Positions 448 to 36,009 of a stretch of DNA of 64,000 bases are shown here, one piece after another. Numbering within the stretch: the first letter of the stretch is position 1; the number at the start of each line of letters is the position of its first letter. Location of the stretch: positions 124,001 through 188,000 of the forward strand of contig NW_025766988.1 of NCBI RefSeq assembly GCF_003918875.1, written 5' to 3'. The notes beneath the pieces are model-generated. The model ran no database searches, was not told where the DNA came from, and saw only the letters and a list, made by a program, of their open reading frames with translations. The stretch comes from Haliotis rubra (lineage: Eukaryota). The position numbers and the translations under genes are program-made.

Positions 448-494
448 ATCCATATGGAAGCAGGTGTTGAGGAAGGAACAGTCTCCCAGAGATT
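439..494 (-). CDS. METTL3: METTL3 exon encoding most of CCCH zinc finger 2; gene continues beyond the window start
   Basis: ESLGDCSFLNTCFHMDTCK, the highly conserved METTL3 motif. Acceptor ttgtag, donor AAG|GTATGT. Confidence 0.95.
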
Positions 495-11560: not shown

Positions 11561-12499
11561 CAAGTTCAATGCTTCTGGTTCTTAAACACTTTTCAGCATA
11601 CTGTTATGAAAAGTTTAGTGCATATCCCTAATTTGAAGTTAAATGTCAGTGTAAACGGTTTTTTAAACATCAGAGTCCATAACATCATAGCTTTAATATG
11701 AACCTCAGTATCAGAATTAATAGGTATAACAATTGCGTTTTCAACTCTGGTATAATCGTGCTTGTTTCTTTTCAAGATGACTATTTTCCTTATATGATTT
11801 GGGCAAACTCTGAAGATCCTTGGTACAGATATATTTTCTTCACACTGTCGGTTTCACACTGCACACACACGCGCGCGAACGCACGCACGCAAACACACAC
11901 ATATTTAATCAAGAACATCATGGCGAGAGGATGTACGCGTGTGCGTGTGCGTGTGCGTGTGCGGGACAGTTTGTACCAGTCCGGACTAATACCCATTTAC
12001 AATATATTTCTAACCCATGGAGTGTACATGCGGCACGCTGACACAGACAAAGTACAGGGAGCTTGTTTTATCCCCACAGTTGTGAGCACCAGGCAGGGTA
12101 ACAACATACACCATCTTTTAAATGGGCACTGATCCAAATCTATTCTTGTCCATCCTACATCCTACTGGCCTTCCGCTATTCAAGGTGGGGCACTAACCAT
12201 TAGACCAAACTGGTTGAACACCTGAATGGATTATTTAAATAATTGAATGTTATTACTAATCCTTTGCTCAAAACACTTACTACGATGCTCAATCTGGTTG
12301 AATCTCCAATATAAGAAAGGCGAAAGATTATTGTTTACTCTCCTGGGGCGGTGGGGTAGCCTAGTGGTTATATGCTCTTACTCCCCTTTTCCTCACAACG
12401 ATTTGGGCGGATTTCTGTCATGTTGAATCCACGGTCTCAGGAAAGTGAATTTGATTTATATTCATCGGTTGACGTGATGGCATGAATGTTAATAATATA

Positions 12500-12690
12500 T
12501 ACACGTGGATTGGTTGGTCAGTGACTGACACATGGATTGGTTTGTCAGTGGCTGACATGTGGATTGGTTGGTCAGTGGCTTACGTGTGGATTGGTTGGTC
12601 AGTGGCTGACGTGTGGATTGGTTTGTCAGTGTATTACAATGACATTGGGATAGGGTGACCACTGACACGGCCATTGGTTCGTCAGTGACT
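12500..12690. repeat. 27-bp minisatellite (GTGGATTGGTTGGTCAGTGGCTGACGT), about 5 copies, each with a CCAAT box
   Basis: Tandem periodicity; degenerate mirrored counterpart at ~33150-33290. Confidence 0.85.
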
Positions 12691-13531
12691 GACCCTGTTA
12701 TTGTACGTGCCTGTTATACCTAGATTTCCTGCTGCAATAGTTCCCATCAAAACTAGGATTTTAGTTGCTGTGGCTTCTATATATATATATATATTTAGAA
12801 AATTGAAGTCATGATAATAGCTCGACTTTAGTTCCAAATGCAAGGGGAACGAACATAGGGATGCGAAAATATCCCTTGAGTATCGAGCGACGGTGATGTT
12901 TGGAAAATGCCCAACTAATTATATCAGACGAGCTTGGCGGTCATTAGGAGCTTCCGTGGCTCACCGGCAACCTGATCCGCCATTGCGACTTCAAAAACCA
13001 ACATGATTAAGGAACGAGAACGCCCTGCTTTGATTTGTTTACTGCTGCATCAGCCAGTTTGAGTAACTTGCCACGCCAACGACGCCCAACCTGTGAAAAC
13101 CGCCACAGGATAACGGTAGTTTGTAAACGGGATTTTGACATTGAAATGTTTAACACAACAAGGTGTAATTGCACCATGTCTGGTAGACATCAATCCTTGT
13201 CGTCCAGGAATGTAGACTATCTTGTTCTGTTCCCACAATCGTGTATTATAACACGTTTGGGGTAATAACCTCACAGGATATACAGTGGAGGGGAGGGGAA
13301 ATTTACTTCCGTAATATATTTGATCTGTCGGCTCAATGCATGTATAATCCGACCATTTAGTGGACACAAAATTTCTGGTTTTATCTGAAATTCTTGTTTG
13401 CAAATTAAAATCTTCATAATTTGACAATTTCGTTTTCCACTGCTCCAATCTAGATCCCTGTAAACCAAGCAGACAAATATAACTGAAGGTTATATACTTG
13501 TGTATAAAACCCTATACCACTCCTATATCTC

Positions 13532-14715
13532 CTGTATATCCCGGGGACAGAGTGGCCAGCATCTGTATATCCCGGGGACAGAGCGGCCAGCATCTGTATA
13601 TCCCTGGGACAGAGTGGCCAGCATCTGTATATCCCGGGGACAGAGTGGCTAGCATCTGTATATCCCGGGGACATAGTGGCTAGCATCTGTATATCCCGGG
13701 GACAGAGAGGTTAGCATCTGTATATCCCGGGGACAGAGTGGCCAGCATCTGTATATCCCGGGGACAGAGCGGCCAGCATCTGTATATCCCGGGGACAGAG
13801 CGGCCAGCATCTGTATATCCTGGGACAGAGCGGCCAGCATCCTCAGTATATCCCGGGGACAGAGCGGCCAGCATCTGTATATCCTGGGACAGAGCGGCTA
13901 GCATCTGTATATCCTGGGACAGAGTGGCCAGCATCTGTATATCCTGGGGACAGAGTGGCCAGCATCTGTATATCCTGGGTTAGCATCTGTATATCCTGGG
14001 ACAGAGTGGCCAGCATCTGTATATCCAGGGGACAGAGTGGGGCCAGCATCTGTATATCCTGGGACAGAGCGGCCAGCATCTGTATATCCAGGGACAGAGC
14101 TGCTAGCATCTGTATATCCTGGGCAGAGTGGCTAGCATCTGTATATCCTGGGACAGAGCTGCTAGCATCTGTATATCCTGGGACAGAGCGGCTAGCATCT
14201 GTATATCCTGGGACAGAGTGGCCAGCATCTGTATATCCTGGGACAGAGCGGCCAGCATCTGTATATCCCGGGATCAGAGCGGCTAGCATCTGTATATCCC
14301 TGGGGACAGAGTGGCCAGCATCTGTATATCCGGGGACAGAGTGGCTAGCAACTGTATATCCGGGGACAGAGTGGCCAGCATCTGTATATCCCGGGGACAG
14401 AGAGGCCAGCATCTGTATATCCCGGGGACAGAGCGGCTAGCATCTGTATATCCGGGGACAGAGTGGCCAGCATCTGTATATCCCGGGGACAGAGTGGCCA
14501 GCATCTGTATATCCCGGGGACAGAGTGGCCAGCATCTGTATATCCCGGGGACAGAGTGGCCAGCATCTGTATATCTGGGACAGAGGGAGCATCAGATATC
14601 CCTGGGCAGAGTGGCATCTGTATATCCCGGGGACAGAGTGGCCAGCATCTGTATATCCCGGGGACAGAGGGGCTAGCATCTGTATATCCCGGGGACAGAG
14701 CGGCTAGCATCTGTA
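13532..14715. repeat. 31-bp satellite (CCGGGGACAGAGTGGCCAGCATCTGTATATC), left arm
   Basis: About 38 tandem units; source of many spurious ORFs. Confidence 0.97.
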
Positions 14716-15475
14716 AATTGCTGGTTCGCTTGATGCCCTTCTAAGGGGGTTGATCGGTGGTCATGCACTCAGACACTGGTTTGTAGTAGTCCAGACTCGA
14801 CTATATTTATAGGTCTCCCTGATTATACCACGGAACGGCGTCAAATAACATTCAATCAGCTAATTTTTTCGGATACTTTTCTTTGCCATGAAACTTTTAT
14901 CCATTGTTGTTAATGTGAGAAATAAAATGTTAGATTAGCAGTTTAGAAGTTTTTGAGTAACAAATCATGGCAAAAGATTACCCAAAATATAACTTGTGGA
15001 TAAAGTATTATTCAAAGAAAACTCAGTTGGATACTTTGGGGAGGCGGATTCAAATTTGACACTTCATTTGACATATTGTGGAGAAGCTCGATTGTTCTGG
15101 AAGATAATTCTCTACCTACACACGAAGCTATTATAGTATTGTTACTTGAAGATGTAAGAGGAAATGAGATACAGCGATGCTTTTTTTCGGAGAGATCACT
15201 GGCATAAATATAGAAATTGTTCAGGGGAGTGTAATTAAGTGGCAAACAAAACCATAGAGGTCGAGAAAAAAACACTCTGTAATTTAAGATTTGTGCATTT
15301 TCTTTATGGTAAATAAACAAGTGTAAGTAGAAAGGCCATCACTTATAAGAGAATATTATACAGCTTTTGGAGAAAAGTGGGTGTGTGTGGGGGTGGTGCA
15401 CACTATTGAGAAAAGGAGGGGTGCACACTTCATATTGACCCGAGTTTCAATGGTCATTTAACAAACTTCCAACAC

Positions 15476-15615
15476 NNNNNNNNNNNNNNNNNNNNNNNNN
15501 NNNNNNNNNNNNNNNNNNNNNNNNNNNNNNNNNNNNNNNNNNNNNNNNNNNNNNNNNNNNNNNNNNNNNNNNNNNNNNNNNNNNNNNNNNNNNNNNNNNN
15601 NNNNNNNNNNNNNNN
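15476..15615. other. assembly gap (140 N)
   Basis: N run followed by a short (GATC)n tract. Confidence 1.
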
Positions 15616-16249
15616 TCGATCGATCGATCGATCCGCCTATGAAAATGACGAAGTGCTACGATCGTTTTGTGGATATGGTTCCAAGCTGATAGACGATGCC
15701 TGTTAGGAGAAACCTTCTGGTTCTATAAATAGTTGAGTCTGGACGAAACAAACCAGGATGTTACGAACAAATCTCCGTGCATTGAAGGCACGCAATCAAC
15801 CATGTCGTGGAGGTTTACTATAACAGGTAGTCCAATTTTGTCACGATGTACGGCCAGCATGGGTCCCTGGGACCTATCACAGAGGAGTGATAATGGAACG
15901 TAGCAACTTATCTTGATTCTAAATATTATCGTTATATAACATTGATATGACAGGTAAAGATCCAGGTTAGAGTTGGTCTTTAGTCAGCCCGTGCATCTTA
16001 AAGGCGACTAACGAGATCACTGGATTGCCTGGTCCAGACTCGATTATTTACAGACCGCCGCCACATAGCTGGAATATTGCTGAGTGCGGCGTTAGACAAC
16101 AACAAATACCACATAGATAAGACCTGTTTTCATCATTAGTTTTAGCTGACGGACAAAAGAAAGTATACACCTATGTTTCGTGGAGGCTGAAAACAGAACA
16201 AACCAAGAAGTGGTTACTCGTGGCATGTATTTGATATGTTATGCATTAG

Positions 16250-16490
16250 AGTGAGTGTGAGTGAGTGACTTTAGTTGTACGCCGCACTCAGCAATATTCC
16301 AGCTATACGGCAGCGGTCTGTAAATAATCGATTCTGGACCAGACAATCCAGTGATCAACAGCATGAGCATCGATCTACGCAATTGGGAACCGATGACATG
16401 TGTCAACCAAGTCAGCGAGCCTGACCACCCGACCCCGTTAGTCGCCTCTTACGACAAGCATGGGTTACAGAAGGCACATTCTAACCCGGT
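16250..16490 (-). mobile_element. SINE family B
   Basis: Consensus match with (ACTC)n tail. Confidence 0.88.
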
Positions 16491-17918
16491 CGTTATGCTT
16501 GGGATAGGGGATAGATATCACAGGTGACATCACATGCTTTGGATTAATGAGTATCTCACAACATATACTAGTACTAACGTTTTGATAACGTTTTTAACTG
16601 TATGATCAAATTCAACTTTAAAGTGCTTTACTGTCTTTTGAGACACATATTTTTACATTACAATTCTAACAGGTTTTTAAGCGTTTTCCCGTAATTTATG
16701 TATGGACTTGTACTTTTAAAAATTTTAAGCCTCGCATGTGAATGACGCAAAAGTGAAAAACGTAACATTTTTATTAAAATCGTAGATTAGATTGTGTATT
16801 TTTCCCAGAAAGGTTGTACAGCGACAAGTAAATGTCATTGCAATCATTATAAGATATTTCTGAATATGGTTTTTGAAGACAGTGTCATTTGGTATATTCT
16901 TTTTTATATTACTGATACGATTCCAGATATTCAGATGCCATAAACCTACTCCAAGATCTTTACGACGTGATATAAATGTTAAAGTGTATGGACTTTACTT
17001 CCTAAACCTTTGCGGGGGAAATATAGGCTGAAAGTTAACCTTCACAACCTACTGCCCTGAACGAGTTAGTAAATTGTGTTTTTCTCAACATAAGAGTTGA
17101 GGTTAAGACAAGAAAACATTAGGGGAGGAAAAATTGACATGCTTCAACAAATACATGATATTCCGAAATGTGAGAGACTGTGGACAAATTCCTTACCAAA
17201 AACATGAACCATGGCAGCATGGTAAAACAGAGAAACGTCCAAGAAATTCCACAACATAGAAATATATACGTGTTTATTTCTATATCCACTGGCACCAGCC
17301 TGCGTTGTTGTAATCGGAGAGGCATCTATTTGATACATGTACAAATATAGGCGACCTCTGCACAGGCGATGACGAGAGCTGACAGGATTTTGACACTCGT
17401 TTGTGGATATTTTGGCAGGAGATTGGCGGTGGTTGCAATCAGTCCTGAAAAACCGGAACAGATTGGTGATTAACTCATACACGAGAATCTAGCCTCAACA
17501 AGGATCCTTCAACACTGCTCGAGTTTAGTTTCAAACACCGAAAAGGGTGTGTACGTTGCCGTCATTTGACCACTGATGAAAAGTCATTATTTGTAGTCTG
17601 AAAAAAACCAAAACATTCAATTATACATTAGAACCAGTACGCCATATACCTCATACACTTGGGATGTTCACTGTAGAAACATATCAAACCATATTTGCTG
17701 TTTTTTCATTTGATGTGTCATAGCTGAATGACCGACCTCGTACGTGTAATGCGCATGTGCATTTTCGCGATACACAATGGTGACTGGTCGATCAAAGCCA
17801 TATGACGTCACAGTGTTAATTGCTAAGAACAATACACTTTGACGTCCCGATGATTGCATGACGTCATCCGAACAATAGACTGCCTTCATTAAAGTTTCTC
17901 TGTATGGGGTTTTATCGG

Positions 17919-18481
17919 GTTACGTCGTCAGCTGAGATGACGTCATTCAAATCATATTGTGACGTAAAGTCCGAATGTCGTCACAAATGAGCTGTTCTAG
18001 ATGCTACCATGGGTGACAGCCGAAACGGCCGGCTGATGACATTTCACTGCTGTACCCGTACTCTATGTCAATGAGTGCAGACAGAAAAACGTGTGTGGAC
18101 CTTTTGGTTTACTTTTGTGTTTACAATGTCGATACACATCATGTGTTGGCCAATTTCCGGGTGTTATTGAGTATTTGAAGCACGGGAATATTTCATTTGA
18201 CGCCGTCGGTTCCAAATGAATTCCCGTGCTTCAAATACTCAATAACACCCGGAAATTCGCCAACACATGATGTTTATCTCCTAAAAGTAAACCGAAAGGT
18301 CCACACACGTTTTTTGTGTCTGCTCTCATTGACATCGAGTACGAATACAGCAGTGAAATGTCATCAGCCGGCCGTTTCGGCTGTCTCCCATGGTAGCATC
18401 TGGAACTGCTCATTTGTGACGTCATTCGGGACTTTACGTCACAATATGATTTTAATGACGTCATCACAGCTGACGACGTAA
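17919..18481. mobile_element. ~560-bp foldback element (near-perfect palindrome centred ~18205)
   Basis: TTACGTCGTCAGCTG...CAGCTGACGACGTAA, arms ~275 bp. No full copy seen in the right arm of the large palindrome. Confidence 0.85.
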
Positions 18482-19067
18482 CAATACAATGGTGTGAGCG
18501 ATGTTTGTATGTATTAATACGCAGAGAATTTCCGGGAATCAAATACCATTTGATCACGTTTTTCAACCAATCAGATTAAAGAACACAGTGACTTTTGGTT
18601 TACAATCCATATTGTCTTCATTTTCTCCCGTAAGTGGCAATGTGTAATAGAGTCAAACACCGGTGTCTGGAAGTTGAAGGGACATACTTAATATTTCGAG
18701 TTATCCTAACTTCGGGACAACTGCAAAATGATAATTAATTAGTTCTTTTTAAGGTGAGGTCAAATAGCCTCTTGATAGGTAAAATCTGCTGCAAGGCTAT
18801 GTTGTTTATCGGCCAGCATTTCACGGGGAGTTGAAAACCAGACATGGAATTCGTGTGAACAAACTTGTGGGCGAGGTCTACTCAAGGCGAGCTGGTTATC
18901 GAGGCTATCAAATGACGGGACTTAGCGACGTGACTGGTCGAGATTGTGCTCCTAATAGTCACGTTACACTTCATCTTCTAATCAAAACAAGAGAGGGATG
19001 TGTTGGATAGTTTTGATATCCAAGAAGTGGTTACTCGTGGCATGTATTTGATATGTTATGCATTAGA

Positions 19068-19497
19068 GTGAGTGTGAGTGAGTGAGTTTTGTACGCCGCA
19101 CTCAGCAATATTCCAGCTATATGGCGGTAGTCTGTAAATAATCGATTCTGGACCAGACAATCCAGTGATCAACAGCATCAGCATCGATCTGCGCAATTTG
19201 GGAACCGATGACATGAGTCAACCAAGTCAGCGAGCCTGACCACCCGATCCCCTTAGTCGCCTCTTACGACAAGCATGGGTTACTGAAGACCAATTCTAAC
19301 CCGGACCTTCAGGGGTATACACAGCATGGACTGTTCATAGTGACTACATATGTATAGTCATCGGTTCCCAATTGCGTAGTTCGATGCTCATGCTGTTGAT
19401 CACTGGATTGTCTGGTCCAGACTCGATTATTTACAGACTATCGCCATATAGCTGGAATATTGCTGAGTGCGGCGTAAAACTAAACTCACTCACTCAC
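19068..19497. mobile_element. two family B SINEs in inverted orientation
   Basis: 19068-19315 on minus; 5'-truncated 19358-19497 on plus. Confidence 0.85.
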
Positions 19498-20030
19498 GTA
19501 TATATTACCTCCTTAAACTATATCCCTTCTATGTGCTCTCAACCAAAGATTCATAAACTAAGGTTCATAATAACTGGGCCATACATACCCTCCACAAGGA
19601 CCTTATAAATACACTGTACATATACACTTGATACAGCTGAAGACCTCTGACTTTGTTGGAATACATGCAGACAAAGACGCATTGTGATATGAATAGAAGT
19701 GTGATAAGAATTTTTTTTATTAATGTTACATTCAATAAATATTCATCCTTATTGTCGTAGCCCCCAGAGCGCCTTTTAAAAAGGGGCCCAGGACAATATG
19801 CTAATGTTGGTGAAAGTGTCTTTGTAGAGTCAGCTTGCTGTCAGATTTGCGTTCCTAAGTCCCGCCTGGATGTACTGGGTGTGGGTTCCAACCCCCGAAT
19901 TTCTTTCCTGGTAGTCATTGGTCTGACAGCACCATTACGTGTTTGTAAATGGATTACCTGTGAATTGTTTTACGTCTGAAATCTGAATTCATCTTATGCT
20001 TCTTCTTATTCCAGAATAGGAAAGAATCAT

Positions 20031-20350
20031 TTGTCAACAGGTATTTATCAGACACGAGTGTCAGAGGGTGTTGCACTCCCTCCGCACCCCCGGAGTTTAA
20101 TTCACAACCATCATTCTCCGGCAGTCATCATGTTCTGAGGCCCGAAGGCCACAGGTAAGATGTTACAATACCTGATGACAATTACACTCAGCCATGCAAC
20201 GTTGTGTAATGGAAATGGAAAATTGAAATAATAAGGCCATAATCATTTGTATATACACATTCAATAAATGAGTTAAACTATTCTTACAACTGATTGGTCA
20301 CTAAAAGTGATGACGTCATATAGTTCCATTGTTGAGAACAATGTGGAACA
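20031..20350 (-). ncRNA. candidate structured ncRNA cassette, copy 1 (leader plus ~150-nt core)
   Basis: CRE 20311-20318, CCAAT 20293-20297, TATATA 20250-20255. Core 20031-20181 is closed by a 15-bp stem and contains a c(UUCG)g hairpin. Confidence 0.5.
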
Positions 20351-20819
20351 CTTTATCCAATGTTAACGACGTTTCAAATCAACATGCATTTTGTAATCAG
20401 AACAATATTTGGCGTTTGTGAAACCACCCTTTCATGCAGTTTATAAATTTTCGTTTTGCTAGTTTTTAACTAAAAAAATTAGTAATGCATTAAATGGCAT
20501 ACCTTCATTATACTAAACGGAATGACTCATTATCTGTCCCTCGGCAATCAATGCCATAGGTTACACTCTCAGAGTTTCGCGTGTAAAATCATTCGTTCTA
20601 CAGAATGGAATCTATTTTCTGATTTGCCTGATTGACATCAAGTAAAGTGTTTTTCACAGGAACTCTTGTAAGTAATGACGTCATGCTATTTCAGTGCAGA
20701 CGACCTTAGTAATATGACGTCACATTGTGCCCCTATCGTTAAAAAGTGACGACTAAATCAATTTATCCCAAACTGGCACAATGACATTATTTCTAGTCCG
20801 AAGGGAATTTACTATCAGC

Positions 20820-21180
20820 ACCTGAAACCATTTCCTAATTTTGATGTATATCTCCTCCTTCCAAAACGTATTTCCTAACTATTATTGAGATTTAGAACAT
20901 GTAACTATAGTTTACCTATTGAGACCGGCCGCTGGTATAATATTCCAAGGGACGAGAGAACGTGTCAACTATGCACTTCTAGAAGCATCGCAGATGAATA
21001 CCATTATAATTTTCATTGCAAAGCATTAGATACTTTGAGAAAACAATATTTACCCACCCATCTACTTTCTCTTCCCAATGAAACAAAGTTCACGAAAATA
21101 TTATCTTTAAAAACTTCTCGAGATATAGTAAATCTATCAAAATATATCCTACATCTATCATCTCTTGTCAGAAAAAATGT
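20820..21180 (+). mobile_element. LINE ORF2 C-terminal fragment (CR1/L2-group-like)
   Basis: RFRTCNYSLPIETGRWYNIPRDERTCQLC...ADEYHYNFHC, a typical LINE C-terminal CCHC region. Confidence 0.8.
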
Positions 21181-21604
21181 TGATATGTTGTTTTCTGCCA
21201 TCTTGAATTTAAATTTATATGTGTATATATGTTTACAATATATGCTCTTGTACCACCAAGGTGGTTATGAGAATAAAGAATTGGATTTCAGGGTGATGAT
21301 CCAGTGATGTAAGGAAATGCAAGTTGCTGTGTAGAAAGAGATATGTGTTCCAAGCTCCCGCCTGGATGTACTGGGTGGGTTCGAATCCCTGATTCGCTTT
21401 CCTGATGGTCATTTGTCTGACAACATCAATACAGTGTCTGTGGCATTCACCAAACAAAATCTACCAACTGTTGCACGTCCTAAATATTTTGCTGATTCTA
21501 ACCTTATCCTAATACCTCTCGTGACATAACTTATCAAACGTTTCAGAAAATCTGAATCCATGACATGTTTCTACTTCTCATATTCCAGAACAGGAAACAA
21601 TCAT

Positions 21605-21920
21605 TTGTCACCAGGTATTAATCAGACACGAGTGTCAGAGGGTGTTGCACTCCCTCCGCACCCCCGGAGTTTAAATCACAACCATCATTCTCCGGCGGTC
21701 ATCATGTTCTGAGGCCCGAAGGCCACAGGTAAGATATTACAATACCTGATGACAATTTTACTTAGCCATTTAACGTTGTGTAATGGAAATGGAAATTGAA
21801 ATAATAAGGCTATAATTATTTGCATATACACATTTAATGAACGAGTTTAACTAATTCCAAAGCTGATTGGTCACTAGAAGTGATGACGTCATATAGTTCC
21901 ATTGTTGAGGAACAATGTGG
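21605..21920 (-). ncRNA. candidate structured ncRNA cassette, copy 2
   Basis: Core 21605-21755 nearly identical to copy 1; CRE 21884-21891, CCAAT 21866-21870. Confidence 0.5.
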
Positions 21921-22162
21921 AAAAATATTTTCCATTGTCAAATCAATATGCGTTTGTAATCAGACCAATATTTGTCTTTTAATTGCTATAAGCAGATCCT
22001 GTTCTGTTGTTGAGAACAATGTGGTACATGTCAACTATTGTTCGTGATGTCTCAAATTGATAGTGTTATGTCTCCAGACCAATATTTGGCGTCTGTAAAG
22101 TGATTTTGTTGGGTTTAATGTTCTGGTCGGGGTTTTTTTCATCGTCAGGTTTATACTGGCAT

Positions 22163-22412
22163 GACCCGCGAAGATCCGGGCTGGAATCGGTCTTCAGTAA
22201 CCCATGTTTGTCGTAAGAGGCGTCTAACGGGATCGGGTGGTCAGGCTCACTGACTCGGTTGACACATGTCATCGTATCCTATTTGTGTAGATCGATGCTC
22301 ATGCTGTTGATCACTGGATTGTCTGGTCCAGACTCGATTATTTACAGACCGCCGCCATGTAGCTTGGGTATTGTTGAGTGCGGCGTAAAAATAAACTCAC
22401 TCACTCACTCAC
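22163..22412 (+). mobile_element. SINE family B
   Basis: Full-length consensus match. Confidence 0.88.
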
Positions 22413-24231: not shown

Positions 24232-24465
24232 CAGGGCCCTTATTCTCGAAACGTTCGTAGCCCTAAGAATTCTTAACTCTGATCGTAGCCAATGTGTTAA
24301 GAATGGGCTTAAGAAGTTCGTAGGGCTACGAACGTTTCGAGAATATCTAGCCAGGGCCTAGATTTTCGAAGCTCTCTTAGCGCTAAGATAGTCGTAAGTT
24401 AGTGTTAATGTATGACACTTACGATTCTCCTAGCGCTAAGAGAGCTTCGAAAATCTAGGCCCTGG
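24232..24465. mobile_element. two adjacent ~115-bp palindromic MITEs
   Basis: TTCTCGAAACGTTCGTAGCCCTA and its reverse complement; CCAGGGCCTAGATTTTCGAAGCTCTCTTAGCGCTA and its reverse complement. The second family recurs at 45672. Confidence 0.85.
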
Positions 24466-24737
24466 TGTACTTGTCAGAGAAATTACGCCTATGTCAGCAT
24501 TTCAGATATATCCTGGTGTGTGGGAGGATAGGGGTTTGGGATGGGAGGGAGACAGAGAGAGCTAGAAAGAGAATGAGAGTGACATAACATTATCAGTTTG
24601 AGTCATCGTGAACAAGAGTTGACGTGTACCACATTGTTCTCAACAATGGGACAGGATCTGCTCATCGCAAAGGTCAAATATTGGACTGATTTCAAACGTA
24701 CGGTGATTTGATACGTCGTTTACAATGGACCACGTGA

Positions 24738-25052
24738 CCACATTGTTCTCATAAATGGAACAGTATGACCAATCTGTTTTCGTGACCAGTCAGTTTTAGG
24801 AATTGTTAAACTTTTTCATTAAATGTGTATACTCAAATAATTATGGCCTTTTAACTTCAGTTTTCCATTTCCATTACACAACGTTGCATAGCTATGTATA
24901 ATTGTCATCAGGTATTGTAACATCTTACCTGTGGCCTTCGGGCCTCAGAACATGATGACTACCGGAGAATGATGGTTGTGAATTAAACTCCGGGGGTGCG
25001 GAGGGAGTGCAACACCCTCTGACACTCGTGTCTGAAAAATACCTGATGACAA
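24738..25052 (+). ncRNA. candidate structured ncRNA cassette, copy 3
   Basis: Core 24902-25052 with a perfect 15-bp closing stem TTGTCATCAGGTATT/AATACCTGATGACAA. Confidence 0.5.
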
Positions 25053-25098
25053 ACGATGGATTTATTTGTCTGAAATATCATGAAACAGGAATATTATT

Positions 25099-25188
25099 GC
25101 CCCGATTCACAAAGTGCTCTTAGCTACGGCTATATGTAGGTGTTACTGATGACTTCAGCGCTGTCATCGCTTTGTGAATCGGGGCCCT
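25099..25188. mobile_element. short palindromic MITE
   Basis: GCCCCGATTCACAAAG ... CTTTGTGAATCGGGGC; a relative sits at 61418-61515. Confidence 0.75.
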
Positions 25189-25340
25189 GAAGGGATGAAG
25201 GTTTGTGAGACGCTGTGAAGACAATTGGTGACATTAACAAACAGTGTGACTTCTTCTTGCTTTGTGTGACCAATCATTTTTGCAAATAATCAAACTAATT
25301 CTTTTAATGTACATATACAAACGATAATGTCACGAATGTA

Positions 25341-26127
25341 GGAAAGAAAGTCACAGGAAAAAAAGTCACGGACAAAATGTCATGGATAAAAAGTCATGAA
25401 TAAAAAGTCACGGATAAAAAGTCATGGATAAAAAGTCACAGGAAAAAAGTCACAATACAATAAGATATATACTAGTTATATAATATATACCAGTGGGTTG
25501 TAAATTGTCTCAATTGTTATAACAGCTTCTGTTTCTGACATGATAACACGATTAATGAGGTAATTGGGACGTGAAACCAAGAGTGATCAGTGAACGTGAG
25601 TGTTGTCTACTGTACGGTACTGTACTGTGTGCTGACGATTAGCTGCCTGACTCTGAGGGTGTGGGTTCGAATCCCGGGTGGGACTCAACCCAACAAAAGT
25701 ACTAGAATTTCTACTTTACTAATAAAGTGTAATCACAAATATAACATATGTTACAAGTGACTTGGTTTAAGTATTTACGTTTAGCCATGTCCTTTCCCAT
25801 TTGCATCATGGATTTTATTAAAAGCAACATTATTTGAAAATAGTGAGTATGATTTTATGCCGCTCTTAGCAATATTCCAGCAACATCACGGCGGGGGACA
25901 CCAAAAATGGGCTTCACACATTGTACCTATGTGGGGAATCGAACCCGGGCCTTCGGCGTGACGAGCGAACGCTTTAACCACTAGGCTATCCCACAGCCCC
26001 AAATAGTATTTGAAGGACACATGTACAGTAAGCACGCAAGTCTCTGATTGATCCTGAGATTTATTGTCATAATTAAACATAATAATAAACAGGTATTGTG
26101 ACTTTTTTTCCTGTGACTTTCTTTCTG
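25341..26127. mobile_element. TIR element with 15-bp subterminal repeats and a nested family A SINE (25843-26000)
   Basis: GAAAGAAAGTCACAGGAAAAAAAGTCAC and its exact reverse complement at ~26099-26126. Confidence 0.75.
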
Positions 26128-27210
26128 ATCACCAATATCACATTACTTCACAATCATTATGTTGAACAGTTGAAGACCTCTGACTTTCATGCAACATGTT
26201 GAAATGGCTTTGTTTAATATACTCATGTCAATAATGGTTGTCACCCCTCCCACCCCAACCCCCTCCCCAACCCCCAACCCCACCCCCACACACATCCCAC
26301 ACCCCCTCTCCAATAAAAAAATTGAAGGGGTGACAACCATTATTGGCATGAGTATACATGCAGACAAAGACTCATTGTGATATGAATAGAAACACAAAAT
26401 ATATAAATACATGTATTACGTTCAAATATAAGGAATATTCATCCTTATTGTCTTATAAGAGTTTAAGGCCAGCATGCTTTCCTGTCAATGTCGTATTGTG
26501 GTTAAAATAGTTAATGTCACAATATGGCAGCTTCCCACCGCCATATTTGTTGATGACATTTAAACTGAATTAATACCGTGATTGTACATAAGAGAGTAAG
26601 TCTTATTTAACCACATCAAACAGAACAGGGAGGTAGAGTCTCTAGAAATTTATTTAAAGTTTTACGACCAATTCCATAAGCCTGGACTCACAAATAACTG
26701 ATTGTAGTGTATCGAGTGATAGCTGGAAACATATAGCTCTGAAATGAGACATATTTGTTTATCAATACTATCCAACACATTCCGGTATTGTTTGGATAGT
26801 ATGTTAGAAGATGAAGTGTCACGTAACTACGAGGAGCACAATCTCGACCATGTAGTCACGTCCGTAATTCCCGTCATGTGATACCCTCCATAACCAACTC
26901 GCCTTCAGTGGACCTCGCCCACAAGTTTGTTCACACGAATTCCATGTCTGGTTTTCAACTCCCCGTGAAACGCTGGCTGATAAACAACATATGCCTTGCT
27001 GCAGAAATTAAAAAAAAATTGATGTTTAACTGAATGAATTCGCATCATTTATGTAGCTGTCAGGAGCGACAATGCGACAATGTCCCTTCTCGGATTACAT
27101 AGTTGATTCACGAGGGACACTTTGCACTTGTGTCGAAGGTCGGATGAATCGTAATATTTAGTGAAATTAAGACAACTTCTAGACACCGGTGTTTGATTGT
27201 ATTACAATCT

Positions 27211-27458
27211 GTTGTTGTTGTTGGTTTGTTGTTTAAGGCCGCAAGCAGCAATATTCCAGTTTTTTGGAGGCGGTCTATAAATAATCGAGTCTGGACCAGA
27301 CAATCCAGTGAACAACAGCATGAGCAACGATCTACGCATTTGGGAATCGATGACATGTGTCAACCGCGTCAGCAAGCCTGACCACCCGATCCCGTTAGTC
27401 GCATCTTATGACAAGCATGGGTTACTGAAGACCAATTCGAACCTGGACCTTCATGGGT
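27211..27458 (-). mobile_element. SINE family B
   Basis: Consensus match. Confidence 0.85.
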
Positions 27459-29096
27459 CTACTACATATTGGCATTTAGGGAGAAGAAGATATGTCATGC
27501 GTCATGTAATCATTTGATGACGTCATAGTGTATTGTTATTAGCAATTAAACACTGGGACGTCCTATTGCATTTATCGGCCAATCACCAGTGTGTATCGCG
27601 AAAATGCACATGCGCATTACACGTACGAGGTCGGTCATTCAGCTATGACACATCAAATGAAAACACGGCAAATATGGGTTGATATGTTTCTACAGTGAAC
27701 ATCCCAAGTGTTATATATGGCGTTCTGGTTCTAAAGTATAATTGAATGTTTTTGTCTCACAGAAAAATAATGATTTTTCATCGGGTTCATTGAGGCCAAC
27801 GTACAAACCCATTTCGGTGTTTGAAACCAAACTCCAGCAGTGTTGAAGGATCCTTGTTGAGGCGAGATTCTCGTGTATCTGGTTAATCACCAATCTGTTC
27901 CGGTTTTTCAGGACTGATTGCAACCAATTCCAATCTCCTGCCAAAATATCCACAAACAAGTGTCAAAATCCCGTCAGCTCTCGTCATCGCCCGTGCCGAG
28001 GTCGCCTATATTTGTACATGTATCAAAAAGATGCCTCTCCGATTACAACAACGCAGGCTGGTGCCAGTGGATATAGAAATAAACACGTATATATTTCTAT
28101 GTTGTGGAATTTCTTGGACGGTTCTCTGTTTTACAATGCTGCCATGGTTCATGTTTTGGTAAGAAATTTGTCCACAGTCTCTCACATTTCGGAATATCAT
28201 GTATTTGTTGAAGCATGTCAATTTTTCCTCCCCTAATGTTTTCTTGTTTTAACCTCAACTCTTATGTTGAAAAAACCCAACAATTTACTAACTCGTTCAG
28301 GGCAGTAGGTTGTGAAGGTTAACTTTCAGCCTATATTTCCCCCGCAAAGGTTTAGGAAGTAAAGTCCATACACTTTAACATTTATATTACGTCGTAAAGA
28401 TCTTGGAGTAGGTTTATGGCATCTGAATATCTGGAATCGTATCAGTAATATAAAAAAGAATATGCCAAATGACACCGTCTTCAAAAACCCCATTCAGAAA
28501 TATCTTATAATGATGGTTCAAGTGACATTTACTTGTAACTTGGCATTGTACGACCTTTCCGCGAAAAATAAAAAAGCATCTAATGATTTTTTTAGAAATG
28601 GTACGTATTTTGCTGTTGCGTCATTCATTTGCGAGGCTTAAAATATTACAAGAGTATCGTGAATGTTATATAACGAAAATATTTAGAATCAAGATAAATT
28701 GCTGTACATGTGTTCATTATCACTCCTTCTCTGTGATTCTTGGATAGGTCCCAGGGACCCATGCTGGCCGTACACCGTGACAAAATGGACTTCATGTTAT
28801 AGTAAAGCTCCGCGACATGGTTGATTGCGTGCCTTCAATGCACGGAGATTTGTTCGTAACATCCTGGTTTGTCTAGTCGGACTCGACTATTCATAAACCA
28901 CGGTGATATCGCTGGAATATTGACTGTTGTTTTGAATAACATTCGGTCTTTGCTATGCATTTCATCACATGTATACTGCTACACCACAGAGGTACAATTC
29001 CATCTCTGTTTGATGACTTTAAAGAATGAAATTAACAAGAAATGTTGACGGCAAGGTAATGTATTTGATATATGGATATCAAAGGCGAAATTACAT

Positions 29097-29315
29097 GAGT
29101 GAGTGAGTTTAGTTCTACGCCGCACTCAGCAATATTCCAGGTATATGGCTGCGGTCTGTAAATAATAGTCTGGACCAGACAATCCAGTGATCAACAGCAC
29201 GAGCATCGATCTGCGTAATTGGGAATCGATGACATGTGTCAACCAAGTCAGCGAGTCTTACGACATTGAAGCATGGGTTACTGAAGATCACTATTCTAAC
29301 CCGGACCGTCACGGG
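29097..29315 (-). mobile_element. SINE family B
   Basis: Consensus match with an internal deletion. Confidence 0.85.
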
Positions 29316-30159
29316 TGCTATATTAATACATGTATCATTTTTTTGTGCTGAAAATTTGTTAAATGACCACTGGAACTCTGGTGAAAATGAATAGTGTGTG
29401 CGCGCACGCACACACACACACGCACACACACACACACCTCAAAAAGCTGTATCCGCCCCTGAATTTTCAAAAGTGGTCTTAGTTTTGTTTTAAAGGGAAT
29501 TATGTTAACTTCATAAAACTTTACGAAAATGCGACATTTATAAGTGATGGCCTTTCTACTTATTCTTGTTTATTTACAATACAAAAATACACAAATTTTA
29601 AATTACAGAGTGTTTTTTCTCGACCTCTATGGTTTTGTTTGCCACTTAATTACACTCCCCTGAACAATTTCTATATTGATGCCAGTGATCTCTCCGAAAA
29701 AAGCATTGCTGTATCTCATTTCCTCTTACATCTTCAAGTAACAGTACTATAATAGCTTCGTGTGTAGGTAGAGACTTATCTTCCAGAACAATCGAGCTTC
29801 TCCACTATATGTCAAATAAAGTGTCAAATTTCAATCCGCCTCCCCAAAGTATCTAACTGAGTTTTCTTTGAATAATACTTCATCTACAAGTTTAATTTGG
29901 GGAAATTCTTACCTTTACTGTTACTCACAAACTTCTAAATTGCCAAACTAATACTTTATTTCTCACATTAACAATAATGGAAACGAAATTGAATGGAAAA
30001 ATAAGTATTCGAATATTTCCATTTGAGTGAATGTTGTTTGACGTCTAGCTCTGGTATAATCACGTGTAAATAATTGAGTCTTGACTCATGCAAACCAGTG
30101 TCTGAGTGCATGACCACCGATCAACCCCCTTAGAAGTGCATTGAGAAAAAACGCAATTT

Positions 30160-32256
30160 ACAGATGCTAGCCACTCTGTCCCCGGGATATACAGATGCTG
30201 GCCGCTCTGTCCCCGGGATATACAGATGCTGGCCGCTCTGTCCCCGGGATATACAGATGCTGGCCGCTCTGTCCCCGGGATATACAGATGCTAGCCACTC
30301 TGTCCCCGGGATATACAGATGCTAGCCACTCTGTCCCCGGGATATACAGATGCTGGCCGCTCTGTATTATGCTATAAGTGCTGAGTGACATCGCTTGTGG
30401 AGCGACGTGCAGAGACAGATGCTAGCCACTCTGTCCCCGGGATATACAGATGCTAGCCACTCTGTCCCCGGGATATACAGATGCTGGCCGCTCTGTCCCC
30501 GGGATATACAGATGCTGGCCGCTCTGTCCCCGGGATATACAGATGCTGGCCACTCTGTCCCCGGGATATACAGATGCTGGCCCCATTGTCCCCGGGATAT
30601 ACAGATGCTGGCCACTCTGTCCCCGGGATATACAGATGCTCTCCGCTCTGTCCCCGGGATATACAGATGCTGGCCGCTCTGTCCCCGGGATATACAGATG
30701 CTAACCACTCTGTCCCCGGGATATACAGATGCTGGCCGCTCTGTCCCCGGGATATACAGATGCTGGCCCCTCTGTCCCCGGGATATACAGATGCTAGCCA
30801 CTCTGTCCCCGGGATATACAGATGCTAATCTCTCTGTCCCCGGGATATACAGATGCTAGCCACTCTGTCCCCGGGATATACAGATGCTAGCCACTCTGTC
30901 CCCGATATACAGGATATACAGATGCTAGCCACTCTGTCCCCGGGATATACAGATGCTGGCCGCTCTGTCCCCGGGATATACAGATGCTGGCCGCTCTGTC
31001 CCCGGGATATACAGATGCTGGCCGCTCTGTCCCCGGGATATACAGATGCTGGCCGCTCTGTCCCCGGGATATACAGATGCTGGCCACTCTGTCCTCTGTC
31101 CCCGGGATATACAGATGCTGGCCACTCTGTCCCCAGATGCTAACCACTCTGGGATATACAGATGCTAGCCACTCTGTCCCCTGGATATACAGATGCTAGC
31201 CACTCTGTCCCGGATATACAGATGCTGGCCGCTCTGTCCCCAGGATATACAGATGCTAGCCGCTCTGTCCCAGGATATACAGATGCTATCCACTCTGTCC
31301 CCGGGATATACAGATACTAACCTCTCTGTCCCCGGGATATACAGATGCTAGCCGCTCTGTCCCCGGGATATACAGATGCTAACCTCTCTGTTCCCAGGAT
31401 ATACAGATGCTAACCACTCTGTCCCCGGGATATACAGATACTAGCCGCTCTGTCCCCGGGATATACAGATGCTGGCCGCTCTGTCCCCGGGATATACAGA
31501 TGCTAGCCACTCTGTCCCCGGGATATACAGATGCTAACCACTCTGTCCCCGGGATATACAGATGCTAGCCGCTCTGTCCCCGGGATATACAGATGCTAGC
31601 CGCTCTGTCCCCGGGATATACAGATGCTATCCACTCTGTCCCCGGGATATACAGATACTAGCCTCTCTGTCCCCGGGATATACAGATGCTAGCCGCTCTG
31701 TCCCCGGGATATACAGATGCTAACCTCTCTGTCCCCGGGATATACAGATGCTAACCACTCTGTCCCCGGGATATACAGATACTAGCCGCTCTGTCCCCGG
31801 GATATACAGATGCTAGCCACTCTGTCCCCGGGATATACAGATGCTGGCCTCTCTGTCCCCGAGATATACAGATGCTAGCCACTCTGTCCCCGGGATATAC
31901 AGATGCTAGCCACTCTGTCCCCGGGATATACAGATGCTGGCCACTCTGTCCCCGGGATATACAGATGCTAGCCGCTCTGTCCCCGGGATATACAGATGCT
32001 AGCCACTCTGTCCCCGGGATATACAGATGCCAGCCACTCTGTCCCCGGGATATACAGAAGCTAGGCGCTCTGTCCCCGGGATATACAGATGCTGGCCTCT
32101 CTGTCCCCAGGATATACAGATGCTAGCCACTCTGTCCCCGGGATATACAGATGCTAGCCGCAGATGCTAGCCTCTCTGTCCCCGGGATATACAGATGCTA
32201 GCCACTCTGTCCCCGGGATATACAGATGCTGGCCACTCTGTCCCCGGGATATACAG
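30160..32256. repeat. 31-bp satellite, right arm (reverse complement)
   Basis: About 65 units, with a short unique interruption near 30365-30415. Confidence 0.97.
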
Positions 32257-33308
32257 GAGATATAGGAGTGGTATAGGGCTTATACACAAGTATATAACCT
32301 TCAGTTATATTTGTCTGCTTGGTTTACAGGGATCTAGATTGAAGCAGTGGAAAAGGAAATTGTCAAATTATAAAGAGTTTAATTAGCAAACAAAATTTCA
32401 GATAAAACCTGAGGTTTTTGTGTCCGCTAAAAGGTAAGATTATACATGTATTGAGCCGAAAGATCAAATATGATTCTCACTCACTCACTCACTCACTCAA
32501 AACTCACTCACCTAATGGTGAGCAATTATCCGAGACGCTCCACTGTATATCCAGTGAGGTTATTACCCCAAACGTGTTATAATACACGATTGTGGGAACA
32601 GAACAAGATAGTTTACATTCCTGGACGACAAGGATTGATGTCTACTAGTCATGGTGCAATTACACCTTGTTGTGTTAAACATTTCTAATGTCAAGAATCC
32701 CGTTTACAAACTACCGTTATCGTGTGGCGGTTTTCACAGGTTGGGCGTCGTTGGCGAGGCAAATTACTCAAACTGGCTGATGCAGCAGTAAACAAAATCC
32801 AATCAAAGAAGGGCGTTCAACATCTATGTTCTCGTTCCTTAATCATGTTGGTTTTTGAAGTCGCAATGGCGGATCAGGTTGCCGGTGAGCCACTGAACCT
32901 CCTAATGACAATCACGGTCATCTGATATACTTCAGTTAGGCATTTTCCAAACATCACGTTCCATCGATACCAAAGTGATATTTTCGTATCCCTATGTTCG
33001 TTCCCCTTGCATTTGGAGCTAAAGCGGAGCTAACATCACGATTTCAATTTTCTTTAAATGTATGTAGAAACAGTAGCAACTAAAATTCTGTTTTTTTATG
33101 CGAACACTTGCTGTTTTAACTAACGGGCACACACATTAACCGAGTCAGTCATTGGCGGACCAATGCCAGCGTCAGTGGTCATCCTATCCCAATGTAAATC
33201 ACTGACCAATCAGTGTCCGTGTAATACACTGACCAACCAATCCACGCGTCAGCCAGTGACGGACCAATTGATCAGTCATTGACCAACGTACCTAACATAC
33301 ATCATTGG

Positions 33309-35243: not shown

Positions 35244-35541
35244 GTACTCAAAACATGCCATGATTAAACAACGTCACACATGATGTGATTTAAGTTTGAA
35301 ACAACCAACGTGAGGTTCTGCGACCCAAGAACATGGTATGACGTACTTTGACACTCATGTCTGTATGATGCCTCTTTGCTGATAAGAACGATAGTGTGTG
35401 ACCTATGGCAGATAATATGTCATTCTATCAGTTTCGAGTAGGCATGCCATTTTATGTATAAAACATTTTAATTCGAGAACAAACAAAACGAAAATGTAAA
35501 AAAACGCATGTTGAGACATCGTTTACAATAGACAACGTGAA

Positions 35542-35815: not shown

Positions 35816-36009
35816 AATTAGTTTTTTATTATTAGAATAAGAATGTTTTCTCAAACATGTCACTTAAGTTTTTATGTAAGCGGAGAATGTTGGACATGGA
35901 CTCGACTTTCCCACATGGGTACAATGTGTGAAACCCATTTCTGGTGTCCTCTGCTGTGATATTTCTGGTATATTGCCGAAAGCGGCGTAAAACTAAACTC
36001 ACTCACTCA

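What the first reader, a model, noticed from the sequence alone, without database searches (positions are those of the whole stretch)
12480..33290. ~21-kb imperfect palindrome with divergently oriented RNA cassettes at its centre
Seen, mirror-order blocks: 12500-12690/33150-33290; 12800-13535/32250-33060; the two 31-bp satellites; 14715-15350/29530-30160; 15760-15945/28670-28870; 16730-17830/27540-28640; 18790-19010/26770-27000; 19630-19760/26160-26450; 21605-22072/24581-25052. The spacer is ~2.5 kb. The arms carry different transposon insertions and different satellite lengths, which argues against a simple assembly fold-back. No protein gene is recognisable inside, yet the arms remain alignable. 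Inference: an ampliconic non-coding locus; read-through of both arms would give long dsRNA, a possible siRNA/piRNA source.
Basis: partly seen in the sequence, partly recalled or inferred. Interest (0 to 1): 0.7.

Follow-up and report, generated by a model that had tools for sequence, protein, structure and literature searches.

The report
Old inverted duplication of U8 snoRNA genes
The 21-kb mirror repeat is real, but it is an old, decaying back-to-front duplication of a small gene cluster for U8, an RNA that helps cut ribosomal RNA, in an abalone-like genome, and nothing found here suggests that it makes silencing RNAs.

Summary
The palindrome is real. The arms are 12513-22072 and 24581-33287, around a 2.5-kb spacer. 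The ninth (19630-19760/26160-26450) is a direct match, not a mirror one.

The central "RNA cassettes" are three intact U8 snoRNA genes (Rfam RF00096, 56-58 bits against a cut-off of 41): two on the minus strand, one on the plus strand, head to head.

The arm blocks and the 31-bp minisatellite occur nowhere else in the 1.38-Gb genome. The arms differ by K2P 0.08-0.21 and carry different SINE insertions. Contigs of two related organisms (3-5% diverged) lie separately on the paralogous central units. So the duplication of those units is older than these species, which rules out a haplotype fold-back.

The U8 coding parts are 98% alike or more, while the flanks are 75-90% alike. Arm divergence is mosaic, with near-identical patches beside stretches 20-28% diverged. 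This points to patchy arm-to-arm gene conversion, or to unknown non-coding elements.

Transcription outward from the central genes gives same-sense RNAs from the two arms, not dsRNA. No RNA run was available to test expression.

This scan has noted other old inverted duplications in the same genome. Recent reviews call U8 vertebrate-specific, so a well-supported mollusc U8 family is the more interesting by-product.

The parts
12513..13531 (.). Left arm, outer unique block. Mirror partner 32257-33287. Begins inside a 27-bp tandem repeat (12501-12631).
   Evidence: 88% ungapped identity, K2P 0.13; two copies in the genome; boundary alignment; tandem repeat
13532..14715 (.). Left 31-bp minisatellite, 39 copies.
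   Evidence: locus-specific, all genome matches lie in the two arms
14719..15348 (.). Left arm block. Partner 29538-30156. Its inner half (15069-15348) is nearly identical to the partner.
15358..15615 (.). High-copy repeat (15358-15475) followed by the assembly gap (15476-15615, N). Non-coding. Flanking anchors are collinear with the right arm.
15718..15943 (.). Left arm block b3. Partner 28662-28900.
   Evidence: K2P 0.09
15944..16718 (.). Insertion found only in the left arm, including a SINE copy at 16249-16489. The right arm is contiguous at this point (28662 to 28647).
16719..17863 (.). Left arm block b4. Partner 27500-28647. Contains a patch of about 600 bp at about 98% identity (16869-17500) and a promoter-like motif cluster at its centre-proximal end.
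   Evidence: no shared ORF; no excess RNA folding
18643..19018 (.). Left arm block b5. Partner 26760-27206.
   Evidence: K2P 0.21
20047..20178 (-). U8 snoRNA gene L1 (outer left copy). Conserved upstream region reaches about 20421-20555.
   Evidence: Rfam RF00096, 58 bits against cut-off 41; alignments; nhmmer
20585..21372 (.). High-copy transposon-like insertion between L1 and L2.
   Evidence: contig word depth about 100 times that of the flanks in four runs
21621..21752 (-). U8 snoRNA gene L2 (inner left copy). Upstream homology with the right copy reaches 22072.
   Evidence: RF00096, 57.4 bits
22073..24580 (.). Spacer. Contains a SINE (22163-22410), unique DNA, an insertion (23090-23983) that is absent from a second sample of the same organism, and a hairpin-type repeat (24131-24524).
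   Evidence: (record 13 of X2 joins 23089 to 23984)
24905..25036 (+). U8 snoRNA gene R (right copy). Upstream region starts at 24581.
   Evidence: RF00096, 56.3 bits; folding z-score -3.87
25240..25329 (+). Relic of a U8 promoter (profile positions 306-393) at the mirror position of L1. This is what remains of a second right-arm unit.
   Evidence: nhmmer E 9e-8; inverted match 20238-20307 with 25329-25260
26760..30156 (.). Right arm blocks b5 (26760-27206), b4 (27500-28647), b3 (28662-28900) and 29538-30156. SINE copies at 27218-27459 and 29096-29316.
30159..32256 (.). Right 31-bp minisatellite, about 68 copies, with a higher-order 93-bp period.
32257..33287 (.). Right arm, outer unique block.
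35502..36256 (+). Two decayed U8 units (35502-35696 and 36007-36256) outside the palindrome, in the same orientation as R.

Best explanation
This is a U8 small-nucleolar-RNA gene locus that has repeatedly copied itself.

Proposed history (inferred): a short tandem pair of U8 units, each with a promoter of about 250-490 bp and a 132-nt gene, lay beside about 8 kb of non-coding DNA that already held a 31-bp minisatellite. Long ago this whole segment was duplicated in inverted orientation. That left the U8 genes head to head across a spacer that is now 2.5 kb.

Since then (shown):
- The arms have decayed to K2P 0.08-0.21.
- They have acquired different SINE and transposon insertions.
- Their minisatellites have expanded to different lengths.
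- One of the four U8 units has been lost except for a promoter fragment.

The three remaining U8 genes stay almost identical because the RNA is needed (inferred). By homology with vertebrate U8, its role would be processing of the 5.8S/28S part of pre-rRNA.

Several patches of the arms also remain nearly identical. The most likely cause is occasional arm-to-arm gene conversion (inferred).

The palindrome as such probably has no function beyond carrying extra U8 genes and allowing such conversion. It is not a dsRNA source.
For: Palindrome and copy number.

U8 identity:
- Three matches to RF00096 at 56-58 bits against a gathering score of 41, covering the full model. Boxes C and D and the U8-typical motifs UCAUCAG, CUUACCUGU and GCAACACCCU are present.
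- There are only five matches in the 1.38-Gb genome.
- The folding z-score is -3.87.
- Five base pairs are kept through double changes between this type and the second U8 type on contig C2589.

Selection on the RNA: the coding part is 95-100% identical per 44-column window, against 75-90% in the promoter and about 30% from 45 nt downstream. The two type-B genes also have identical coding parts within flanks about 90% alike.

Age:
- Arm K2P is 0.08-0.21.
- Contigs of organism B (3.2% different) lie separately on the L1 promoter, the L2 distal promoter, the spacer and the R promoter, at a 92% likeness threshold that excludes the 82-87% paralogues. Contigs of organism C (5.1% different) lie on the L1 promoter, the L2 downstream flank and the spacer; R is not shown in C.
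- A second sample of the same organism holds all three units.

The tandem pair is older than the inversion: a promoter relic lies at 25240-25329, mirroring L1.

Mosaic divergence: the dispersion index of mismatches per 50 bp is 4.4, against a maximum of 1.5 in 2000 permutations. Perfect runs reach 109 bp.

The patches are not coding and not structured.

Other old inverted duplications were noted in this genome.
Against: - No RNA data: no run on record as RNA holds the locus. Expression of the U8 genes, and of anything else in the arms, is not shown.
- The inverted orientation rests on the assembly alone. Short-read contigs tile the centre but break inside two high-copy repeats (22219-22384 and 24236-24443), so no independent molecule links the spacer to both arms.
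- The pairing of the U8 5' end with the 5' end of this organism's 28S rRNA is no better than for shuffled sequences (p 0.29).
- Pairwise distances among the three units (L1-R 0.14, L1-L2 0.16, L2-R 0.18) do not fit the simple order 'tandem first, inversion second' unless conversion has blurred them.
- With only two arm sequences and no outgroup, gene conversion and selective constraint on the near-identical patches cannot be told apart.
Confidence: 0.7

Rival explanations
1. Hairpin-RNA, siRNA or piRNA source. A transcript runs through both arms, folds back into long imperfect dsRNA and is diced, or the locus acts as a dual-strand piRNA cluster.
For: Two inverted arms of about 9 kb exist, with perfect-match runs of up to 109 bp and patches of about 98% identity over 300-600 bp. 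These could form dsRNA if they were co-transcribed. Transposon and SINE fragments lie in the arms and the spacer.
Against: - The only recognisable promoters, those of the U8 genes, point outward from the centre. Read-through from them would give same-sense RNAs from the two arms.
- No promoter or transcript crossing the centre is known.
- Overall arm identity is only 81-92%, with many indels.
- About half of each arm is unalignable arm-specific insertion.
- No RNA run holds the locus.
- Follow-ups on two other old inverted duplications in this genome also found no support for silencing (those notes are unchecked).
Confidence: 0.05
2. Assembly error. The two arms are real paralogous segments but were joined, or one was flipped, wrongly at a repeat in the spacer. 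On this reading the palindromic arrangement does not exist in the animal.
For: - The unique part of the spacer is bounded by a very high-copy SINE (22163-22410) and a hairpin-type repeat (24131-24524).
- No short-read contig bridges either repeat.
- The left arm contains a scaffold gap (15476-15615).
Against: - Contigs cross both arm/spacer homology boundaries: 21892-22218 and 21945-22129 across 22072, and 24444-24890 across 24581. They also join the unique spacer parts to each other.
- Word depth is similar over the arms and the spacer, about 4-9 in X2 and about 130-300 in X1 (depth from contigs is a weak measure).
- Arm divergence of 8-21% excludes a haplotype or read fold-back chimera.
- Similar old inverted duplications are reported elsewhere in this genome.
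Confidence: 0.08
3. The arms carry a further unrecognised non-coding gene, such as a lncRNA or a new small-RNA host, present in both copies. The near-identical patches would be its exons or regulatory elements kept by selection, not conversion tracts.
For: - Block b4, read outward from the centre, starts with two TGACGTCA sites, a CCAAT box (intact in the right arm only) and a GCGCATGCGC-like motif. About 170 bp around these is about 97% conserved. The layout resembles the CRE-plus-CCAAT part of the U8 promoter.
- Three patches (12963-13263, 15069-15348, 16869-17500) are about 98% alike amid stretches 20-28% diverged.
Against: - No ORF is shared between the arms, and in the one frame open in both arms most changes alter the amino acid.
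- Pfam is blank.
- No Rfam family matches there, even at E up to 1.
- Folding energy equals that of shuffles, z -0.3 and +1.1.
- The similarity of b4 to the U8 promoter profile is not significant (E 9).
- There are no other copies in the genome.
Confidence: 0.15

Closest known systems
Vertebrate U8 snoRNA genes (human SNORD118; the Xenopus U8 gene family of several distinct functional genes, Peculis et al. 2001, as cited in the reference list of PMC2943600)
   Same: The full-length match to the U8 covariance model is above Rfam's cut-off. Boxes C and D are present, the 5' single-stranded region and the 3' stem-loops are in the same order, and there are several gene copies with sequence variants.
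   Different: - The host is an abalone-like mollusc according to other notes of this scan (not verified here), whereas U8 is described as unique to vertebrates (PMC8993069; bioRxiv 10.1101/2025.10.10.681432) and as not found in invertebrates (PMC2943600).
- The upstream region shows CRE/CCAAT-type motifs, not a recognisable snRNA proximal element.
- Pairing with 28S rRNA, cap type and function are untested.
Large sex-chromosome palindromes with arm-to-arm gene conversion (human Y-chromosome amplicons; recalled from my own knowledge, not checked here)
   Same: Two long inverted arms lie around a unique spacer of a few kb. Genes sit in both arms, and there are signs that the arms exchange sequence (mosaic identity).
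   Different: - Those arms are more than 99.9% alike and carry protein-coding testis genes.
- Here the arms are 81-92% alike overall, and only patches are near-identical.
- The only recognised genes here are 132-nt RNA genes.
- Sex linkage is unknown.
Hairpin-RNA (endo-siRNA) loci and dual-strand piRNA clusters of animals (recalled from my own knowledge)
   Same: A long inverted repeat that also contains transposon fragments.
   Different: - No transcript through both arms is known.
- The identified promoters diverge from the centre and would give same-sense RNAs.
- Arm complementarity is low.
- No small-RNA data exist.
Other old inverted duplications in the same genome noted by this scan (s1-352091, s1-353968, s1-347389)
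   Same: These are kb-scale, diverged, apparently non-coding inverted duplications. One follow-up also inferred exchange between the arms.
   Different: This one has functional-looking RNA genes (U8) at its centre and a locus-specific minisatellite in both arms. I did not examine the others.
Tandem snRNA-type gene arrays of this genome (U3: 12 copies about 1.27 kb apart on C2308; U1: arrays with a period of about 627 bp)
   Same: Multicopy genes for small nuclear or nucleolar RNAs that are kept alike.
   Different: Those arrays are head to tail with near-identical units. The U8 type-A locus is head to head, has only three live copies, and has strongly diverged flanks.

Membership tests
U8 snoRNA (Rfam RF00096) | Score above the family's gathering threshold over the whole covariance model | tested here: met
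   58, 57.4 and 56.3 bits against 41, model positions 1-135. No competing family matched.
U8 snoRNA (Rfam RF00096) | Box C (UGAUGA) after the 5' domain and box D (CUGA) at the 3' end | tested here: met
   AACAUGAUGA and GUCUGA are present in all three copies and in both type-B copies.
U8 snoRNA (Rfam RF00096) | Conserved secondary structure supported by compensatory changes | tested here: met
   Five pairs are kept through changes on both sides between type A and type B. The folding z-score is -3.87. Only four distinct sequences were compared, so power is limited.
U8 snoRNA (Rfam RF00096) | The 5' end is complementary to the 5' end of 28S rRNA | tested here: inconclusive
   The organism's own 28S start was located at L006:1954. 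The duplex energy is -12.2 kcal/mol, against -10.9 +/- 2.8 for shuffles, p 0.29. Short complementary blocks (AGGU/ACCU, AUC/GAU, GUC/GAC) can be seen by eye.
U8 snoRNA (Rfam RF00096) | LSm-binding octamer in the stem-loop after box C | not tested
   The paper that defines the octamer could not be read, so I had no reference sequence to compare with.
U8 snoRNA (Rfam RF00096) | Expressed as a capped RNA of about 130 nt that is needed for 5.8S/28S processing | not testable with these tools
   No run on record as RNA holds the locus.
Independently transcribed snRNA-type gene | Own conserved promoter with a proximal sequence element shared with other snRNA genes | tested here: inconclusive
   An upstream region of 250-490 bp is conserved among the copies and is retained in the relics. 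There is no motif shared with the U3 or U1 upstream regions. The PSE proposed in note s1-335207 is absent upstream of U8.
Palindrome with arm-to-arm gene conversion (ampliconic type) | Two inverted arms around a unique spacer | tested here: met
Palindrome with arm-to-arm gene conversion (ampliconic type) | Arms kept near-identical along their whole length | tested here: not met
   K2P is 0.08-0.21, and only 53% of the left arm is alignable.
Palindrome with arm-to-arm gene conversion (ampliconic type) | Evidence of sequence exchange between the arms | tested here: inconclusive
   Mosaic identity is strongly non-random (dispersion 4.4 against at most 1.5 in permutations). Without an outgroup this cannot be separated from constraint. 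There is no GC difference between patches and diverged stretches.
Hairpin-RNA / piRNA-cluster small-RNA source | Transcription that yields complementary RNAs from the two arms | tested here: not met
   The promoters that can be identified diverge from the centre (U8 on the minus strand at left, on the plus strand at right). This gives same-sense RNAs. A transcript through both arms cannot be excluded without RNA data.
Hairpin-RNA / piRNA-cluster small-RNA source | Small RNAs of defined size mapping to both arms | not testable with these tools
   No RNA run was available.

The most novel reading that the evidence does not exclude
The three central genes, with two more on another contig, are true functional U8 orthologues in a mollusc. 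If so, the U8-dependent step of 5.8S/28S rRNA maturation is much older than vertebrates. That would contradict reviews up to 2025 that call U8 vertebrate-specific. Head-to-head duplication with patchy arm-to-arm conversion would then be one way an invertebrate keeps several U8 copies alike. From memory, a 2011 survey of unusual animal snoRNAs may already list invertebrate U8 candidates. I could not check this, so the claim may not be new to specialists.
Probability: 0.55. Interest if true: 0.55.

Novelty: new member of a known kind. Interest (0 to 1): 0.35.

Why it matters
As a palindrome it matters little. It is one more old inverted segmental duplication in a genome where this scan has noted several, and it gives no support to a silencing-locus reading.

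It does give a clean, datable example of how a small-RNA gene locus grows: tandem copy, inverted copy, loss of units, and patchy homogenisation.

The more useful point is the identity of the cassettes. This is a well-supported U8 snoRNA family in a protostome, with two diverged types that covary in structure. It makes the repeated statement that U8 is vertebrate-specific directly testable. It also offers an invertebrate system for studying a snoRNA whose mutation causes a human brain disease (LCC; PMC8993069).

Tried and rejected
- Coding genes in the arms. Ten ORFs were scanned against Pfam. Only an EGR-type C-terminal domain outside the palindrome matched. Six-frame comparison of the three best-conserved patches in both arms found no shared open frame. 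Mismatches show no third-position bias.
- Another structured RNA in the 600-bp conserved patch. Rfam finds nothing there at E up to 1. Folding is no better than for shuffles on either strand.
- A further decayed U8 unit in block b4. The match to the nhmmer profile of the U8 unit is not significant (E 9).
- A shared snRNA promoter element. Upstream regions of U8-A, U8-B, U3 and U1 show no common motif by eye.
- The bacterial-type promoter and terminator scan is irrelevant for a eukaryote and was ignored.
- tRNA scan: none found.
- U8-28S pairing: not better than chance.
- GC-biased conversion signal: none, GC 0.41 against 0.38, p 0.25.
- Literature on invertebrate U8. Only the C. elegans CeR-2 candidate turned up. 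One paper could not be fetched.
- RNA evidence: no RNA run holds the locus.

Full report
**Observation**

A blastn comparison of the window with its own reverse strand shows one anti-diagonal chain of blocks:
- 12513-14718 with 33287-31007
- 14719-15348 with 30156-29538
- 15424-15475 with 29398-29345
- 15718-15943 with 28900-28662
- 16719-17863 with 28647-27500
- 18643-19018 with 27206-26760
- the innermost units, 20026-20421 and 21580-22072, which both match 24581-25078

The arms are 9560 and 8707 bp and the spacer is 2508 bp. About 53% of the left arm aligns. The 31-bp arrays have 39 copies on the left and about 68 on the right.

This is far beyond chance. Three arm blocks searched against the whole 1.38-Gb genome have exactly two copies, the two arms. 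All 74 genome matches to the 31-mer lie in the arms, 19 forward on the left and 55 reverse on the right. So the minisatellite is specific to this locus and was most probably present before the duplication.

**The assembly gap**

The gap at 15476-15615 follows a repeat with at least 1750 candidate copies (15358-15475). The anchors on either side keep their order and orientation relative to the right arm. The change in offset (204 bp) is about the size of a SINE copy in the right arm (29096-29316). Nothing coding is nearby, so frame does not matter.

**What the cassettes are**

Rfam places three full-length U8 snoRNA genes (RF00096) at 20047-20178 (-), 21621-21752 (-) and 24905-25036 (+). They score 58, 57.4 and 56.3 bits against a gathering score of 41. 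The whole genome has only two more, 4.3 kb apart on contig C2589.

The RNAs carry box C and box D, and the U8-typical stretches UCAUCAG, CUUACCUGU and GCAACACCCU. The C2589 type shares the first 45 nt but differs in the 3' stem-loops, with five pairs kept through double changes. The RNA folds much better than shuffles, z -3.87.

Among the three copies here, identity is 95-100% in the coding part. It is 75-90% in the 250-490 bp upstream and falls to about 30% beyond roughly 45 nt downstream. The two type-B genes likewise have identical coding parts inside flanks about 90% alike. That pattern is what purifying selection on a working RNA gene with its own promoter looks like.

The upstream region holds a TGACGTCA site, a CCAAT box and an octamer-like element. 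I found no element shared with the U3 or U1 genes of this genome. The snRNA PSE proposed in an earlier first-reader note is absent.

I located the organism's own rDNA: 5.8S at L006:1501-1654 and the 28S start at 1954. The predicted pairing of the U8 5' end with the 28S 5' end is not better than for shuffled sequences, p 0.29. That defining feature therefore stays open.

**History of the locus**

A profile of the U8 unit finds a promoter fragment at 25240-25329 (+), E 9e-8. It lies 200 bp downstream of the right gene, at the mirror position of the outer left gene. The profile also finds two decayed units at 35502-35696 and 36007-36256, outside the palindrome, as an earlier follow-up noted.

The simplest history is a tandem pair of U8 units, then an inverted duplication of the pair together with about 8 kb of flank, then loss of one unit on the right. 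The distal promoter (-330 to -490) is shared only by L2 and R, which fits L2 and R being mirror partners. The pairwise distances (0.14-0.18) do not resolve the order.

After the duplication the arms took up different insertions:
- SINE copies at 16249-16489, 19066-19316 and 19357-19500 on the left only
- SINE copies at 25841-26003 and 27218-27459 on the right only, and one at 29096-29316 whose mirror position falls at the left-arm N gap
- a high-copy element between L1 and L2 (20585-21372)
- an element in the spacer (23090-23983) that is absent from a second sample of the same organism

**Real or artefact**

Arm divergence is K2P 0.08-0.21. That is far above any haplotype difference and incompatible with a chimeric fold-back read.

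I laid the contigs of four public runs on 19600-25500 at a 92% threshold, which shuts out the 82-87% paralogues (differences summed).
- A second sample of the same organism (1.6% different) holds L1, L2, the spacer and R separately.
- Organism B (3.2% different) has its own contigs on the L1 promoter, the L2 distal promoter, the spacer and the R promoter.
- Organism C (5.1% different) has its own contigs on the L1 promoter, the L2 downstream flank and the spacer.

The duplications of the central units are therefore older than the splits from B and C. By the ratio of distances they are roughly three to four times older than the split from B.

Contigs cross both homology boundaries (22072 and 24581). 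Word depth is similar over the arms and the spacer, though depth from contigs is a weak measure.

What is not independently shown is the orientation. The contigs break inside the SINE (22219-22384) and inside the repeat at 24236-24443, so only the assembly links the spacer to both arms.

**Mosaic arms**

Mismatches are not spread evenly. Per 50 bp the counts run from 0-3 in three patches (12963-13263, 15069-15348, 16869-17500) to 8-23 elsewhere. The dispersion index is 4.4, against at most 1.5 in 2000 permutations. Perfect runs reach 109 bp.

The patches hold no ORF shared by both arms and no Pfam match. They have no Rfam match and no excess folding. They do not differ in GC from the diverged stretches.

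Patchy arm-to-arm gene conversion is the most economical reading. An unrecognised non-coding gene is the alternative. It is hinted at by a conserved cluster of CRE, CCAAT and GCGCATGCGC-like motifs at the centre-proximal end of block b4. I could not separate the two without an outgroup.

**The silencing idea**

The left genes are on the minus strand and the right gene is on the plus strand, so both are read away from the centre. The right arm is the reverse complement of the left. The minus-strand RNA of the left arm and the plus-strand RNA of the right arm are therefore homologous in the same sense. Read-through from the cassettes cannot give dsRNA.

Only a single transcript crossing all 21 kb would fold back, and nothing suggests one exists. 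No run on record as RNA holds the locus, so this remains untested rather than disproved.

**Context and novelty**

Other notes of this scan call the genome abalone-like, and they report further old inverted duplications in it. I did not verify the species, and the run names were coded.

Recent literature calls U8 unique to vertebrates (PMC8993069; abstract of bioRxiv 10.1101/2025.10.10.681432). A 2010 paper states that no invertebrate homologue was known apart from a C. elegans candidate (PMC2943600). From memory, a 2011 survey of unusual animal snoRNAs may already list invertebrate U8 candidates. I could not find it in the library.

The palindrome itself is an ordinary kind of structure. The mollusc U8 family is the part worth a specialist's look.

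**Limits**

- There were no RNA data and no long reads.
- Only the central 5.9 kb was checked in other runs.
- Only two arm sequences were available for the conversion question.

Noticed in passing
window 133-615 (+): An ORF of 160 aa matches Pfam DUF3432 (E 4e-10). From memory, this domain occurs at the C-terminus of EGR-type zinc-finger proteins. It is probably the last exon of an EGR-like gene, 12 kb left of the palindrome.
   Followed up: no
G000:C2589:764441-764575 and 768747-768881 (L004, L005): A second U8 type: two tandem genes 4306 bp apart, 52.8 bits. Their coding parts are identical, but only 533 bp of shared flank is about 90% alike. Their upstream regions are unrelated to those of the window's U8 genes. 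The coding part is 78% identical to the window type.
   Followed up: partly
window 23090-23983: Insertion polymorphism. One contig of a second sample of the same organism joins 23089 directly to 23984. The element in the spacer is therefore present in the assembled individual and absent in the other.
   Followed up: partly
window 27500-27650 and mirror 17863-17710: A conserved promoter-like cluster: two TGACGTCA sites, a CCAAT box (intact in the right arm, CCAGT in the left) and a GCGCATGCGC-like motif. It is followed by the 600-bp patch at about 98% identity. No gene could be assigned to it.
   Followed up: partly
G000:C2308:612250-626439; G000:C727, C1200, C2497: U3 snoRNA genes form a 12-copy head-to-tail array with a period of about 1.27 kb. 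U1 snRNA genes form long arrays with a period of about 627 bp and near-identical units. This contrasts with the head-to-head, diverged U8 locus.
   Followed up: no
window 22163-22410, with copies at 8016-8230, 16249-16489, 19066-19316, 27218-27459, 29096-29316, 33333-33516 and others: A very abundant SINE-like element with an (ACTC)n tail. Its summed word depth in public runs is about 100,000 times that of unique DNA. A second 165-bp family has at least 17 copies in the window.
   Followed up: no
window 12501-12631: A 27-bp tandem repeat (4.9 copies) sits exactly at the outer boundary of the left arm. The right arm has fewer copies at 33180-33287. The end of the duplication falls inside this repeat.
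   Followed up: partly
window 11867-11960: A hairpin that matches the mir-3149 model weakly on both strands (32.5 and 28.7 bits against a cut-off of 100). It is probably a small palindromic repeat, not a microRNA.
   Followed up: no
window 24131-24524: Two adjacent hairpin-type (MITE-like) repeats with long inverted termini lie at the right edge of the spacer. They are high-copy in all four runs.
   Followed up: no
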